Translations under genes and position numbers: made by a program
Assembly: GCF_000143415.4 (NCBI RefSeq)
Contig: NW_003314323.1
Location: 376,499-440,498, forward strand
Reading direction: 5' to 3'
Origin: Selaginella moellendorffii
Taxonomy: Eukaryota > Plantae > Lycopodiophyta
Length of the DNA: 64,000 bases
The notes under the pieces: generated by a model
What the model saw: only the letters and a program-made list of their open reading frames with translations
The model's database searches: none
What the model was told of the DNA's origin: nothing
Part shown: piece after piece, positions 1 to 3,234 of the stretch
Layout of the letters: every line of letters begins with the position of its first letter
Numbering within the stretch: position 1 is the stretch's first letter

Positions 1-997
1 ACGTACCCAGTCGAGACCTCTAAGCAAGTTCTTGAGTGGCTTGGGTATTCTCATTGTATCTAGCACGCTTTGTCCGGGAAGAACCACCAGTACCTTACAT
101 AAATAAATTGACTCGATATTGTTTTGAAAGAAGAAAGGATCACTTGCCTGTAACCTGCGTCTTCCCCAGTGTATAGCCTCGTTGTGTGATTGATGATACA
201 GATCGATCCTTGCAGGACCTTTGATCGCACCTCCACGGTCTTCCACCTGATGAAGTAATAGAATGTAAAGATGAGAAGAATGAAAGCTCGCTAGAACCTT
301 TCCCCAGCCATATCCTGGAACAAACATCCTGGTTCCAAAAGGATAGTAGTTTGTATCAGCTGCGATCGTTCCATGGCGCGGAAATAGTCTCCAGGGGAAA
401 AGAATCAAACGAGCTGGGAGCTTGTGGTACTGCAAGAAACTGAGCTTTGAAAAAATTGGTGGTCTGGCCTGGAAAAAGAGAAAGAGAGAAAAAAAAGATG
501 AGATACACTTCTAGAAGATAAAGAACATGGAAATTGTCAATGCGAACTATCATTTCTCTCATTTTTGTGTGTCTTTTCGTCCTCCCTTGACTCTCTGACC
601 TTTGAAATTGACAGTATGATCGATCCAAAAGTACCTGAGCTGGGAAAGTGCCATTAGATGTAAGACCGTAGTATGGAGATCCAGAGAGACTAGTGGCAGT
701 CCAAAACCTGGAATGCTCAGAGCCTAAGAACACGGGCAGCGTAAAAGAAAAAAATCTTACTTTGCAATGAGTGGCAATGCAGCTTCGTCCAAATACCCCC
801 GTTTTCTCTTGCGGAAGCGCAACGGAACCCAGGATGGCGAGATCCCCAAGTAGTAGAAGCCTGGCAATTTGATTCCCCATTCCCAATTGCAGCAGTAGCC
901 ACAGCTGCATGGAAGTCATGCCGATCGCCTGCGCATTGCAAATTCAAGCTTACCTGCAGTAGGCCGTGCACTCGATCAGCTTCTTGGACGGCGGCAT
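1..997 (-). CDS. Spliced 3D (Asp-Asp-Asp) domain protein, MltA/YuiC-like peptidoglycan-hydrolase fold; 3' end runs off the window
   Basis: Manual exon assembly: 954-997, 761-904, 635-707, 298-468, 148-246, 1-93. Four introns are GT-AG and one (94-147) is GC-AG; frame is conserved throughout. Product: MPPSKKLIECTAYCSCGYCCNWEWG...YYGLTSNGTFPAQARPP...GTIAADTNYYPFGTRMFVPGYGWGKVEDRGGAIKGPARIDLYHQSHNEAIHWGRRRLQVLVV. It has the TAY, G-x-T-x-x-G-T, IAAD, EDRGGAIKG, RIDLY and WGRR motifs of the 3D domain. Confidence 0.88.
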
Positions 998-1098
998 TCT
1001 TCCCCCTACCCCGCCCAAGCTTAAGCCATTCTAAGAACCCTAACTTAAGAGCCCTAACAAACAGGGGAGCATATTCGATATTCGATTTGGTCTATTTT

Positions 1099-3234
1099 AT
1101 GCTTGCTGAGAGGAAGATCTTGGCGCAGCTCGTCAAGGCCGCCGGCGATGGCAGGGACGCGATCGATGCGCGGCGAATCCACGCGCGTGTCTTGCGCAGG
1201 GAGCTCGGCCGCGACCGATTCCTCCAGAATCTCATGGTGGAAATGTATGGCAAATGCGGGCGATTGGAGGAAGCCCTGGCGGTGTTCGAGGGCATCGATC
1301 AGCCAAACATCTTCTCCTGGAACATCATGCTCCAGGCGATGGCGCACAGCGAGGATCTGGAGGCCACGGTAGGGTTCTTCGAGCTCATGCCCGTCCGGGA
1401 CGCTGTTTCTTGGAATGCGATGCTCAAGAAGCAGTGCTGCTGCCACGAGGATGGAAGAGGGGAATCGATCCAGGCGCGGGATTTCTTCCAGAAGATGCCG
1501 CATCACGGCATCGTCGCGGCCACCGCGATGATCACAGCGCTTGGCCACGATCGCCAGGTCTCCCAGGCGCAGGAGATTTTCGACGCAATGCCTGGCCAGG
1601 ACGTGGTTTCTTGGACCGCGATGACGACGGCGCTGGCGGCGAGCGGCGATCTAGACCGCGCGAGGAGGATGTTCGATCGGATGCCGGAGAGGAACGAGGT
1701 GACTTGGAAGGCATCGATCCAGGCGCTCGCGGAGAGGCGATTCCTCCCCCAGGCCAGGGAGATGTTCCAGCGAATGCCGGCGCACGATTCTTTCGCGTGT
1801 AACGCGATGATCCAGGCGTACGTCGAGAGCGGCGATCTGGAGAGCGCCCGCGAGACATTCTCGTCGATGGAGGAGAAGAACGCCGTGGCGTGGAATTTGC
1901 TCATCGTCACGCATGCCTCGAATGGGTATGTGGAAGAGGCCGTGAATTTCCTCCATAGCACTCCACACGAGGACGTGATGCCATGGAACGCAGCACTCCA
2001 ATCGCTAGCGCACAGAGGCATGCTGGGAGAGGCCAGGAAGATCTTCGCTACAATGCCACAGCGAAACTTTGTTTCGTGGTCACTGATGATCGCTGCAAAT
2101 GCCGAGGCCGGGGATCTAGAAGCCGCCAGGGATTTGTACGAGCGATCGCCAACGCCGCGAGACATGATCGTCTCAACGGCGATGCTCTCGGGGTATGCTC
2201 GAAACGGCTGCCTGGATCGAGCGAGGAGCTTGTTCGACGAGATGGAGAGCTGGGACGTTGTCGCGATCACGACCATGATCACGGCATACGCGAACCATGG
2301 TGTTCTTGGCGAGGCCTGGGATTTGTTCCGGAGGATGCCGCAGAGAGACTGCGTGACTTGGAACACGATGATCGCGGCCTACACACACAACTCTCGGGCC
2401 AGAGAAGCGAGAGTTTTGCTCGAGAGGATGCCGAGATGGAGCTCGGTTTCGTGGAACACGGTTCTCTCCGGTTACGCGTACGCTGGTCTCCTGGCCGAGG
2501 CAACCAAGTTGGCGATCGAGATGCCGCAGAGGGACGTGGTTTCCTTCACGATCATGCTCGCGGCGAGTGCTCTAGCCGGAGAGCTCGCTCAGGCCAAGAA
2601 GATCTTCGACGCGATGCCACAGCGAGACGCAGCGTCCTGGCACACAATGCTCGTCGTCTACGCGCAGCACGGCCGCCTCACGGACGCTCGCTCGATCTTC
2701 GAGGAGATGCCGCAGCGAGACGTGGTGTCGTGGACGGCGCTGGTGGCGTCCAACGCTCGCCACGGCCGCTGTGAGGACGCGAGGCGCTTGTTCCAGCTCA
2801 TGGAGCTCGAGGGAGAGCTCCCGGACGAGGTGAGCTTCACCGGTATCCTGAGCGCCTGCTGCCACACCGGATCGCTGGACGACTGCTGGAGTTTCTTCCG
2901 GGCGATGGTGGGCGACTACAGCATCCGGCCGCTCCAGGAGCACTTCTCGTGCTTGGCGGACGCGCTGGGCCGCGCCGGGAGGCTGGCGGAAGCTCGGGAA
3001 GTGGTGGAGAGAATGCCATTCTCGCGGGATACAGCCACCGAGACGAGCTTGCTGAGCGCCAACCGGATCCATGGCGAGGTGAGCGAGGAGGATATCACAG
3101 TGGACGATCGTGGCGGTGCCTGTGCAGCGCTGATTTCCAACGCTTTGGCTGCCGCTGGGAGGAGGGAGGATCCGAGAGCTCGCGCGAGCAACGCTGGATT
3201 GAGGCCTGGGCGGAGCTGCGTTTTTGCTGCGTGA
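1099..3234 (+). CDS. PLS-class pentatricopeptide repeat protein with C-terminal E region, no DYW
   Basis: Intronless ORF of ~31-aa repeats (A..IFD.MP.RDVVSW.AM), followed by FTGILSACCHTG and HFSCLADALGRAGRL. First ATG is at 1099; the track starts at a TTG at 1087. Confidence 0.93.
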   Translation: MLAERKILAQLVKAAGDGRDAIDARRIHARVLRRELGRDRFLQNLMVEMYGKCGRLEEALAVFEGIDQPNIFSWNIMLQAMAHSEDLEATVGFFELMPVRDAVSWNAMLKKQCCCHEDGRGESIQARDFFQKMPHHGIVAATAMITALGHDRQVSQAQEIFDAMPGQDVVSWTAMTTALAASGDLDRARRMFDRMPERNEVTWKASIQALAERRFLPQAREMFQRMPAHDSFACNAMIQAYVESGDLESARETFSSMEEKNAVAWNLLIVTHASNGYVEEAVNFLHSTPHEDVMPWNAALQSLAHRGMLGEARKIFATMPQRNFVSWSLMIAANAEAGDLEAARDLYERSPTPRDMIVSTAMLSGYARNGCLDRARSLFDEMESWDVVAITTMITAYANHGVLGEAWDLFRRMPQRDCVTWNTMIAAYTHNSRAREARVLLERMPRWSSVSWNTVLSGYAYAGLLAEATKLAIEMPQRDVVSFTIMLAASALAGELAQAKKIFDAMPQRDAASWHTMLVVYAQHGRLTDARSIFEEMPQRDVVSWTALVASNARHGRCEDARRLFQLMELEGELPDEVSFTGILSACCHTGSLDDCWSFFRAMVGDYSIRPLQEHFSCLADALGRAGRLAEAREVVERMPFSRDTATETSLLSANRIHGEVSEEDITVDDRGGACAALISNALAAAGRREDPRARASNAGLRPGRSCVFAA

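What the first reader, a model, noticed from the sequence alone, without database searches (positions are those of the whole stretch)
1..997. Intron-containing plant gene for a bacterial-type 3D-domain (peptidoglycan lytic enzyme) protein, missed by the ORF track
Seen: six short exons splice in frame to a protein with all three 3D-domain aspartate motifs (IAAD, VEDRGGAIKG, RIDLY), the TAY and WGRR flanks, a Cys cluster (C-S-C-G-Y-C-C) and a hydrophobic insert (LPARLILFPWRLFP). An in-frame stop lies 12 codons upstream of the ATG, so no signal or transit peptide is evident. Known: 3D domains belong to bacterial MltA/YuiC/Sps cell-wall enzymes, and some non-seed plants, including Selaginella, retain plastid peptidoglycan synthesis genes. 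Inference: this is an old, domesticated gene of bacterial origin (five introns, one GC-AG). It could be an unrecognised remodelling enzyme for plastid peptidoglycan or an antibacterial factor. I know of no characterised plant 3D protein.
Basis: partly seen in the sequence, partly recalled or inferred. Interest (0 to 1): 0.9.

Follow-up and report, generated by a model that had tools for sequence, protein, structure and literature searches.

The report
Plant gene for peptidoglycan-cutting enzyme
This is a real, expressed six-exon gene of a lycophyte (Selaginella-type) genome for a small enzyme of the bacterial MltA/YuiC "3D" family, which cuts the sugar chains of peptidoglycan. The gene is inherited across green algae and mostly non-flowering plants, so it is a good but untested candidate for remodelling the peptidoglycan layer around chloroplasts, although it carries no chloroplast-targeting peptide.

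Summary
On the minus strand, 997 to 1, six exons and five introns (49, 53, 166, 51 and 54 nt; the last is GC-AG) encode a 212-aa protein. The last four codons lie beyond the window. Assembled transcripts from four independent studies join all six exons at exactly these junctions.

The protein passes the Pfam 3D threshold (61 bits; cut-off 23.8). It keeps all three aspartates, including the one aligned with the catalytic D162 of YuiC. A confident model (pLDDT 90.8) matches YuiC and MltA (Z about 10.5).

The gene is not new to databases. Orthologues are auto-annotated as "3D domain-containing protein" in Physcomitrium, Marchantia, Chara and Klebsormidium, but I found no paper on any plant member.

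New here: the eukaryotic proteins form one clade (support 100/98). It runs from Prasinoderma and Pyramimonas through streptophyte algae, bryophytes, lycophytes, a fern and a gymnosperm to just two named angiosperms. Its sister group is periplasmic lipoproteins of Desulfobulbales, not cyanobacteria.

The distribution roughly tracks lineages reported to keep plastid peptidoglycan with a class A PBP, and one Pyramimonas paralogue carries a LysM domain. No member has a transit peptide, so a plastid role is plausible but unproven. A secreted antibacterial role is unlikely.

The parts
954..997 (-). Exon 1: ATG at 997-995, then MPPSKKLIECTAYC plus 2 nt. Holds T11 of the TAY motif and C14.
   Evidence: Junction 954|904 seen in contigs of 4 runs.
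998..1033 (-). 5' leader. Transcript contigs reach at most 1014. An in-frame TAG at 1033-1031 lies 12 codons upstream of the ATG, so no N-terminal presequence is possible.
905..953 (-). Intron 1, 49 nt, GT-AG.
   Evidence: Skipped in contigs of 4 runs.
761..904 (-). Exon 2: rest of the Cys cluster (C16, C19, C20), the WEWG motif (E23), and the eukaryote-specific beta insert (about residues 26-62).
   Evidence: Strands 22-27, 32-36, 43-47 and 61-65 in the model.
708..760 (-). Intron 2, 53 nt, GT-AG, phase 2.
635..707 (-). Exon 3: FWTATSLSGSPYYGLTSNGTFPAQ, with invariant Y75, G77, T79 and P85.
   Evidence: Weakly aligned to YuiC PGDPLYGLTYSGV; this stretch scores -0.4 bits and is not significant on its own.
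469..634 (-). Intron 3, 166 nt, GT-AG.
298..468 (-). Exon 4: helical insert ARPPIFSK...LPARLILFPWRLFPRHG, which the bacterial sister group also has, then the first Asp motif TIAAD (D125, codon 357-355) and PGYGWGK.
247..297 (-). Intron 4, 51 nt, GT-AG. It is in frame and has no stop. Low-depth unspliced pieces were seen in one run.
   Evidence: records 2-4 of X1 at depth 2.5-4, against 53-73 for the spliced form.
148..246 (-). Exon 5: VEDRGGAIKG (D147, codon 240-238), RIDLY (D159, codon 204-202, aligned with the catalytic D162 of YuiC and D308 of MltA) and WGRRRLQ.
94..147 (-). Intron 5, 54 nt, GC-AG (GCAAGT...GTAAG). No GT-AG alternative exists within the 3-nt junction ambiguity.
1..93 (-). 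Exon 6 (cut by the window edge): last barrel strand VLVVLPG, then the eukaryote-specific tail that ends in a basic amphipathic helix (model residues 195-211). The last four codons (CLLF) and the stop lie outside the window.

Best explanation
The locus is a functional nuclear gene for a 212-aa single-domain enzyme of the MltA/YuiC '3D' class, a double-psi beta-barrel lytic transglycosylase.

Shown here:
- It is transcribed and spliced as modelled.
- It keeps the three family aspartates, the Thr of the TAY motif and the fold.
- It belongs to a clade that covers the green lineage and whose nearest relatives are periplasmic lipoproteins of Desulfobulbales. On becoming eukaryotic, the clade lost the lipoprotein signal. 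It gained an insert after the WEWG motif and a basic amphipathic C-terminal helix, or, in some prasinophytes, a Gly/Ala-rich hydrophobic insert.

Inferred mechanism: D159 acts as the single catalytic acid/base on a GlcNAc-MurNAc glycan strand and gives a 1,6-anhydro-MurNAc end, as in YuiC and MltA. The four-Cys cluster probably holds a structural metal, and the C-terminal helix holds the enzyme at a membrane surface.

Inferred role: trimming or opening the plastid peptidoglycan layer during chloroplast growth and division in lineages that still polymerise peptidoglycan. How a protein without a presequence would reach the intermembrane space is unknown.
For: - Gene and expression: exon map, and 206 of 208 residues identical to the genome's own protein. 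Single contigs of 621-652 nt from four studies span all five junctions.
- Family: Pfam 3D at 61.3 bits against a 23.8 cut-off. YuiC at E 1.6e-12, with IAAD, VEDRGG and RIDLY aligned on its D129, D151 and D162 motifs.
- Conservation: D125, D147 and D159 are invariant, and T11, C14, C16, C19, C20 and E23 at least 90% conserved, in 100 plant and bacterial sequences.
- Fold: AlphaFold2 pLDDT 90.8, pTM 0.82. YuiC Z 10.6 and MltA Z 10.5.
- One old acquisition and vertical descent: the eukaryote clade has support 100/98. The seed-plant subclade Cryptomeria+(Tasmannia+(Colocasia+P0123)) has 98/95.
- Link to peptidoglycan in eukaryotes:
  - Named holders are Prasinoderma, Pyramimonas, Mesostigma, Chlorokybus, Klebsormidium, Chara, Zygnematophyceae, mosses, liverworts, lycophytes, a fern and a gymnosperm. 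Only two named angiosperms hold it.
  - The literature reports the full pathway including PBP in Physcomitrella, Sphagnum, Selaginella, Micromonas pusilla and some prasinophytes (PMC4815162). Among seed plants it reports a class A PBP only in gymnosperms (PMC12681378).
  - A Pyramimonas paralogue (P0382) fuses the domain to LysM, at 22.5 bits against a 20.9 cut-off.
- Link to peptidoglycan in bacteria: the homologues have lipoboxes. They sit directly downstream of mutL in 38 of 56 loci, with a class A PBP within 5 kb in 26 of 56.
Against: - No signal peptide, transit peptide or transmembrane segment in the streptophyte proteins, whereas the substrate would lie between the two envelope membranes.
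- No activity, localisation or mutant data exist for any eukaryotic member.
- The phyletic match is read from named database hits and from papers, not from a systematic presence/absence matrix.
- Two angiosperms keep the gene, although a bifunctional PBP is reported absent from angiosperms.
- No glaucophyte member was seen, although glaucophytes have the thickest plastid wall.
- A lytic transglycosylase of another family is, from my memory of Utsunomiya 2021, already assigned to moss plastids. That paper is not held in the library.
- Double-psi beta-barrel proteins such as expansins can be non-catalytic.
Confidence: 0.5

Rival explanations
1. The enzyme fold is retained but the job has changed. 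The protein would work in the cytosol or on the cytosolic face of a membrane, on another GlcNAc-containing glycan or as a glycan-binding or regulatory protein, with no direct action on plastid peptidoglycan.
For: - No targeting peptide in any streptophyte member, and the start is fixed by an upstream stop.
- No transmembrane segment, only an amphipathic C-terminal helix.
- YuiC itself cleaves plain chito-oligosaccharide (PMC4499186).
- Two angiosperms keep the gene, although angiosperms are reported to lack a bifunctional PBP.
- Other plant peptidoglycan-pathway genes such as MurE are reported to have been repurposed in Arabidopsis and maize.
Against: - All catalytic and sugar-contacting motifs are invariant over the whole green lineage. 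That is hard to explain without the ancestral chemistry.
- No polymeric GlcNAc substrate is known in the plant cytosol (general knowledge).
- The loss pattern parallels loss of polymerised plastid peptidoglycan.
- LysM fusion in Pyramimonas.
Confidence: 0.3
2. It is an antibacterial or immune factor. It would digest the walls of invading or associated bacteria, or generate muropeptide signals.
For: - Lytic transglycosylase chemistry would act on bacterial walls.
- Plants sense peptidoglycan through LysM proteins (cited in PMC4815162).
Against: - No secretion signal in any eukaryotic member, so the protein cannot meet extracellular bacteria by the normal route.
- Single-copy, slowly evolving and inherited vertically, unlike typical defence genes.
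- Lost from nearly all named angiosperms, which face the same bacteria.
Confidence: 0.07
3. It is an artefact: bacterial contamination, a dead relic of a transfer, or a chance motif match.
For: The nearest non-plant relatives are bacterial.
Against: - Five spliceosomal introns are removed in transcripts of four studies.
- A plant PPR gene starts 89 bp away on the other strand.
- Two alleles were seen.
- Orthologues follow the plant phylogeny.
- Pfam E-value is 1e-16.
Confidence: 0.01

Closest known systems
YuiC (SpsC) of Bacillus subtilis, a minimal 3D-domain lytic transglycosylase (PDB 4WLI, 4WJT, 4WLK)
   Same: - Best sequence match (E 1.6e-12, residues 119-188) and best structural match (Z 10.6, 96 residues, rmsd 2.6, 32% identity).
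- The same three Asp motifs, including the catalytic one, and the same TAY Thr position.
- A single stripped-down double-psi beta-barrel.
   Different: - The NCBIfam SpsC model scores only 42 bits against a 280 cut-off, so it is not an Sps orthologue.
- Extra elements: a four-Cys cluster after TAY, a beta insert of about 40 residues, a helical insert (residues 87-118) and a C-terminal amphipathic helix.
- No signal peptide.
- Encoded by a spliced eukaryotic gene.
MltA, membrane-bound lytic murein transglycosylase A (E. coli 2AE0/2PI8; Neisseria 2G5D)
   Same: - Same barrel and catalytic aspartate: D159 corresponds to D308, D147 to D297 and D125 to D261.
- Z 8.6-10.5.
- Membrane-tethered in bacteria, as the Desulfobulbales sister proteins are.
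   Different: - Pfam matched only the 3D model; no other family, MltA-specific or otherwise, was reported.
- About 120-190 residues shorter than the MltA chains matched (331-405 residues).
- The inserts sit in the same general place as MltA's second domain, but homology between them is not shown.
3D-domain lipoproteins of Desulfobulbales and related Thermodesulfobacteriota (for example Desulfopila, Desulforhopalus), uncharacterised
   Same: - Sister group in the tree, at 44-50% identity.
- Shared CxCxxCC cluster, WE(R/W)G motif, helical insert with LFPW, and PGYGWG.
   Different: - They have a lipobox signal peptide.
- They lack the LPG..YLG..P..LR.RKKG insert and the C-terminal helix.
- They lie in a class A PBP / mutL neighbourhood.
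Plastid peptidoglycan hydrolases already proposed in plants and algae: DipM (PMC4015805) and the moss hydrolases of Utsunomiya et al. 2021 (cited in PMC12681378)
   Same: Bacterial-type wall-cleaving enzymes encoded in the nucleus of peptidoglycan-bearing Archaeplastida. The proposed role is the same: opening the wall at plastid division.
   Different: - Different protein families. From memory, not checked here, the moss set is MltB-, VanY- and AmiC-like.
- Those with a phenotype are plastid-targeted. The 3D protein has no presequence and appears in none of the papers searched.
[quoted passage not shown] 2016 (PMC4815162)
   Same: It was picked out by the same logic, co-occurrence with the peptidoglycan pathway. 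It also lacks a transit peptide and was proposed to sit in the outer envelope.
   Different: - PPASP is a binding protein without a catalytic domain.
- It is restricted to streptophytes and found in angiosperms that lack PBP.
- The 3D family reaches back to Prasinoderma and is almost absent from angiosperms.

Membership tests
Pfam 3D domain (PF06725) | Profile match above the curated gathering score | tested here: met
   61.3 bits, E 1.1e-16, profile positions 2-71 of 72, cut-off 23.8. The unspliced frame alone scores 52.9 bits.
Pfam 3D domain (PF06725) | The three conserved aspartates, including the catalytic one (YuiC D129/D151/D162; MltA D261/D297/D308) | tested here: met
   D125, D147 and D159 align with the YuiC motifs (residue equivalences from PMC4499186). 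They are invariant in 100 homologues.
Pfam 3D domain (PF06725) | Thr that orients the catalytic Asp (YuiC T91, MltA T99) | tested here: inconclusive
   T11 of the TAY motif is at least 90% conserved. The structural alignment maps model 1..173 onto YuiC 81..176, which would put T11 near T91. I could not inspect residue-level superposition.
MltA/YuiC-type lytic transglycosylases | Double-psi beta-barrel fold | tested here: met
   Model pLDDT 90.8. YuiC Z 10.6, MltA Z 8.6-10.5, RlpA-like 4AVR Z 7.8, expansins Z about 7.5.
MltA/YuiC-type lytic transglycosylases | Cleavage of the MurNAc-GlcNAc bond with a 1,6-anhydro product | not testable with these tools
   Needs enzyme assays on sacculi or glycan strands.
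MltA proper | The MltA-specific domain in addition to 3D | tested here: not met
   Pfam reports only the 3D family at E <= 0.1. The protein has 212 residues; the MltA chains matched have 331-405.
Firmicute Sps proteins (SpsC/YuiC equivalog, NCBIfam NF058633) | Equivalog score above the cut-off | tested here: not met
   42.1 bits against a cut-off of 280.
Plastid peptidoglycan machinery | N-terminal plastid transit peptide or other route to the intermembrane space | tested here: not met
   There is an in-frame stop 12 codons upstream, transcripts end at or before 1014, and the domain starts at residue 8. The same start is kept in orthologues from Zygnematophyceae to gymnosperms.
Plastid peptidoglycan machinery | Phyletic co-occurrence with the full Mur/PBP gene set | tested here: inconclusive
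   Named holders largely match lineages reported to keep the pathway with PBP. Exceptions are Tasmannia and Colocasia, no glaucophyte member was seen, and no systematic matrix was built.
Plastid peptidoglycan machinery | Localisation at the envelope or division site, and a plastid-division phenotype | not testable with these tools
   Needs fusions and knockouts.

The most novel reading that the evidence does not exclude
This is an overlooked lytic transglycosylase of the chloroplast peptidoglycan layer. It was acquired from a Desulfobulbales-like bacterium by the ancestor of green plants. It reaches or acts on the envelope without a presequence, held there by its basic amphipathic C-terminal helix (or by a glycine-zipper-like insert in prasinophytes). 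It is needed for plastid division wherever a PBP-built sacculus survives, and it was lost together with that sacculus in most flowering plants.
Probability: 0.3. Interest if true: 0.75.

Novelty: new variant of a known kind. Interest (0 to 1): 0.55.

Why it matters
Mosses, lycophytes, ferns, gymnosperms and several green algae still build peptidoglycan around their chloroplasts and need it for plastid division. How that layer is opened and turned over is only partly known. This gene adds a candidate cutting enzyme that is conserved and catalytically intact. Its distribution follows the layer better than most pathway genes do, and no paper I could find mentions it.

It also poses a clear cell-biology puzzle. 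A periplasmic-type enzyme lost its export signal when it became a plant gene, yet kept its active site for roughly the whole history of green plants. Solving where it acts would either reveal an unusual route to the envelope intermembrane space or a new cytosolic use of lytic transglycosylase chemistry.

The donor is not cyanobacterial. This adds to evidence that the plastid wall machinery is a mosaic of lateral acquisitions.

Tried and rejected
- A first splice guess placed the exon 4 acceptor at 430/429 (ttcttgcag|TAC) and read exon 2 as ending after AAG in phase 0. Both were wrong. The homologue P0001 and the transcript contigs fix exon 4 at 468 and the exon 2 donor at AA|GTAAGA.
- An alternative last intron (AG|GTTACA...) that would end the protein at ...YWWFFPDKAC* is not used. 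Transcripts use the GC-AG intron.
- Literature searches found no paper on a plant 3D protein. I searched for '3D domain' with peptidoglycan, chloroplast and moss; PF06725; lytic transglycosylase with plastid and streptophyte; six locus names of orthologues; and the 2012 moss lateral-transfer list.
- The domain-evolution paper PMC13069868 has no supplements held. Utsunomiya 2021 is not held.
- Cyanobacterial origin: none of the best 80 of at least 486 bacterial loci is cyanobacterial, and neither are the next clusters I could name.
- Glaucophyte or red-algal members: none appeared in a search seeded with the Pyramimonas protein. This is not proof of absence, because many MMETSP hits carry no species name.
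- The apparent N-terminal extension in Colocasia is probably translated 5' leader. A conserved internal Met lies 16 residues before ECTAYC, and the upstream parts of P0124 and P0123 differ.
- Glycine-zipper Pfam models match the Pyramimonas insert only below threshold.
- I could not measure Cys-Cys distances or the packing of the C-terminal helix, because model coordinates are not exposed.
Full report
**1. What is in the sequence**

Reading the minus strand from 1100 to 1 in three frames shows coding-like segments that switch frame at consensus splice sites. The model has six exons: 997-954, 904-761, 707-635, 468-298, 246-148 and 93-1. The five introns are 49, 53, 166, 51 and 54 nt long. The first four are GT-AG and the last is GCAAGT...AG.

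The translation agrees with P0001 at 206 of 208 residues. P0001 is the 212-aa protein that the collection holds for this genome itself. The two differences are allelic: one run carries 405 T>G, which gives the I to L change. The window edge cuts the gene four codons before its stop.

The ATG is at 997-995, and an in-frame TAG at 1033-1031 is the 12th codon upstream. The neighbouring plus-strand ORF at 1087-3234 is a PPR protein that starts 89 bp from the ATG, so the setting is plant nuclear DNA. Another note of this scan calls the genome Selaginella. I did not verify the species. The nearest named orthologue is from the lycophyte Diphasiastrum.

**2. Expression**

Twenty public runs hold about 40% of the sampled words of 1-1100, as expected if they hold only the exons. 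I laid four runs from four studies on 1-1400. In three of the four runs a single contig of 621-652 nt joins all six exons; in X1 two contigs between them cover the same five junctions. The skips are 54, 51, 166, 53 and 49 nt, placed at the modelled junctions.

The 3-nt ambiguity at the last junction allows no GT-AG reading, so the GC-AG intron is real. Contigs reach no further upstream than 1014. The runs are only guessed to be RNA, but the spliced form in four studies is itself the evidence. Low-depth pieces in one run cover intron 4 unspliced.

**3. Family**

- Pfam: 3D (PF06725) at 61.3 bits, E 1.1e-16, covering nearly the whole profile.
- PDB sequences: only YuiC matches (E 1.6e-12). TIAAD, VEDRGGAIKG and RIDLY align on its three aspartate motifs.
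- The YuiC paper identifies D162 (MltA D308) as the catalytic carboxylate, oriented by T91. D151 contacts the -2 sugar, and the crystal holds a 1,6-anhydro product (PMC4499186).
- In an alignment of 100 plant and bacterial homologues, D125, D147 and D159 are invariant. T11, the four cysteines and E23 are at least 90% conserved.
- The AlphaFold2 model is confident (pLDDT 90.8, pTM 0.82).
- Its best structural matches are YuiC (Z 10.6) and MltA from Neisseria, E. coli, Acinetobacter, Agrobacterium and Caulobacter (Z 8.5-10.5). Other double-psi beta-barrels follow at Z about 7-8.

It is not MltA proper, since Pfam matches only the 3D model. It is not an Sps equivalog either (42 bits against a 280 cut-off).

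**4. Relatives and origin**

Named orthologues at 52-59% identity (BLAST, against a query that still contained intron-derived residues) or 45-74% (alignments with P0001) include:
- mosses and liverworts: Physcomitrium, Sphagnum, Ceratodon, Marchantia, Calypogeia, Riccia;
- vascular non-flowering plants: Diphasiastrum, Adiantum, Cryptomeria;
- streptophyte algae: Chara, Closterium, Mesotaenium, Spirogloea, Klebsormidium, Chlorokybus, Mesostigma;
- two angiosperms: Tasmannia lanceolata and Colocasia esculenta.

Further members come from Pyramimonas (two), Prasinoderma coloniale (two), and marine metagenomes and metatranscriptomes. One metagenome contig has a Symplekin gene next door, so it is eukaryotic.

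An exhaustive profile search finds only 26 clusters (at 50% identity) with E <= 1e-30, so the subfamily is small.

Among one genome per prokaryotic species, at least 486 loci encode relatives. The best 80 (42-50% identity) carry Desulfobulbales or other Thermodesulfobacteriota / 'delta proteobacterium' labels, apart from two labelled only 'bacterium', one labelled only 'uncultured bacterium' and one binned as Candidatus Methanocomedens. The next named cluster is from Desulfuromonas, and none is cyanobacterial.

A maximum-likelihood tree (LG+C20, 64 rows, 191 columns) puts all 42 eukaryote-type rows on one side of a branch, with support 100/98. The Desulfobulbales proteins are their sister. Inside the clade, Cryptomeria+(Tasmannia+(Colocasia+P0123)) has 98/95. 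This points to a single ancient acquisition followed by vertical descent and loss.

**5. What changed on the way into eukaryotes**

The bacterial proteins start with a lipoprotein signal and lipobox. Almost every full-length eukaryotic protein starts within about 20 residues of the TAYC motif; the longer N-termini are discussed in item 8.

Eukaryotes have an insert after WEWG. In streptophytes and the marine Mamiellophyceae-like forms it is about 40 residues, modelled as beta strands. These forms also have a C-terminal tail ending in a basic amphipathic helix (hydrophobic moment 0.34-0.65, no segment hydrophobic enough for a transmembrane helix).

In Prasinoderma, Pyramimonas and their relatives the insert is longer and Gly/Ala-rich. 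Its 19-residue hydropathy reaches 1.7-2.3 in four of the six such proteins checked (1.1 and 1.3 in the two Pyramimonas proteins), which suggests membrane insertion there. Pfam glycine-zipper models match it only below threshold. Some form of membrane attachment therefore seems to replace the lost lipid anchor. This is an inference.

**6. Evidence on function**

Two points support action on a GlcNAc-containing wall glycan:
- The active site is intact (item 3).
- A Pyramimonas paralogue carries a C-terminal LysM domain above the Pfam threshold.

In Desulfobulbales the gene lies directly downstream of mutL in 38 of 56 informative loci. A class A PBP lies within 5 kb in 26 of 56.

Three points support plastid peptidoglycan as the substrate:
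- The holders largely coincide with lineages reported to keep the full pathway including PBP. These are Physcomitrella, Sphagnum, Selaginella, Micromonas pusilla and other prasinophytes (PMC4815162), and gymnosperms, the only seed plants with a class A PBP (PMC12681378).
- The gene does not appear among named proteins of Arabidopsis, rice, Chlamydomonas or other well-annotated genomes in the lists I saw.
- The Colocasia protein has lost the helical insert and the tail.

Four points weigh against it:
- There is no transit peptide.
- Two angiosperms retain the gene.
- No glaucophyte member was seen.
- There is no experiment on any eukaryotic member.

**7. Novelty**

UniProt and NCBI already label several orthologues '3D domain-containing protein', so the gene's existence is on record. 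I found no paper that mentions a plant or algal 3D protein, in the plastid-peptidoglycan literature or in lists of lateral transfers. Plastid wall hydrolases described so far belong to other families: DipM (PMC4015805) and the moss hydrolases of Utsunomiya 2021, known to me only by title and memory.

I class this as a new, eukaryote-specific variant of the MltA/YuiC kind. It is worth a direct test, but it is not a new kind of system. A bacterial-type amidase gene elsewhere in this genome was flagged as a second candidate plastid wall hydrolase.

**8. Limits**

- The taxon lists depend on which database entries carry names.
- The co-occurrence argument is qualitative.
- Residue-level geometry of the model could not be inspected.
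- P0201 (about 58 extra residues), Mesostigma P0125 (about 20), P0223 and Pyramimonas P0382 have longer N-termini, which were not examined for targeting signals.
- The root of the family tree rests on distant 3D proteins.

Noticed in passing
window 998-1086 and 1087-3234 (+): The 3D gene and an intronless 715-aa PPR gene (GC 61.5%, against 50.5% for the 3D coding sequence) are head-to-head. Only 89 bp separate the two start codons, so they probably share a bidirectional promoter.
   Followed up: partly
window 247-297 (-): Intron 4 is 51 nt, in frame and free of stops. Low-depth unspliced pieces cover it in run X1 (depth 2.5-4, against 53-73 for the spliced form). Retention would insert 17 residues just before the VEDRGG motif.
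   Followed up: no
window 379 and 405: Run X1 carries C>T at 379 and T>G at 405. The second change gives the I to L difference seen in P0001, so two alleles or haplotypes of the gene are expressed.
   Followed up: partly
window 1259-1313 (+), inside the PPR ORF: One low-depth contig of X1 (2.46) skips 53 nt with non-canonical ends (GC..CT) and a short flank of 20 nt. This is probably an assembly artefact or a paralogous PPR, not an intron.
   Followed up: no
P0382 / P0219 (Pyramimonas sp., MMETSP1081): A green-algal paralogue of 362-370 aa fuses the 3D domain to a C-terminal LysM domain. It has weak, sub-threshold EF-hand matches at its N-terminus.
   Followed up: partly
P0357, P0372, P0367, P0224, P0204 (Prasinoderma, Pyramimonas and marine relatives): A second eukaryotic subtype has a long Gly/Ala-rich hydrophobic insert between the WEWG motif and the YW.ET motif. 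It may be a glycine-zipper-like membrane hairpin. Prasinoderma has two paralogues.
   Followed up: partly
L001-L080, e.g. L049:1958-6474: In Desulfobulbales the homologous lipoprotein gene overlaps the end of mutL (38 of 56 loci). A divergently transcribed class A PBP lies upstream in many loci (26 of 56 within 5 kb).
   Followed up: partly
P0124 (Colocasia esculenta) and P0123: The monocot orthologue lacks the 32-residue helical insert (ARPP...LFPW...RH) and the amphipathic tail. Its annotated N-terminal extension looks like translated leader. The Tasmannia isoform X2 has a different C-terminus.
   Followed up: no
P0200 (Adiantum nelumboides, 431 aa): A fern entry carries the C-terminal 160 residues of the family after 270 unrelated residues. 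It is either a gene-model fusion or a real fusion.
   Followed up: no
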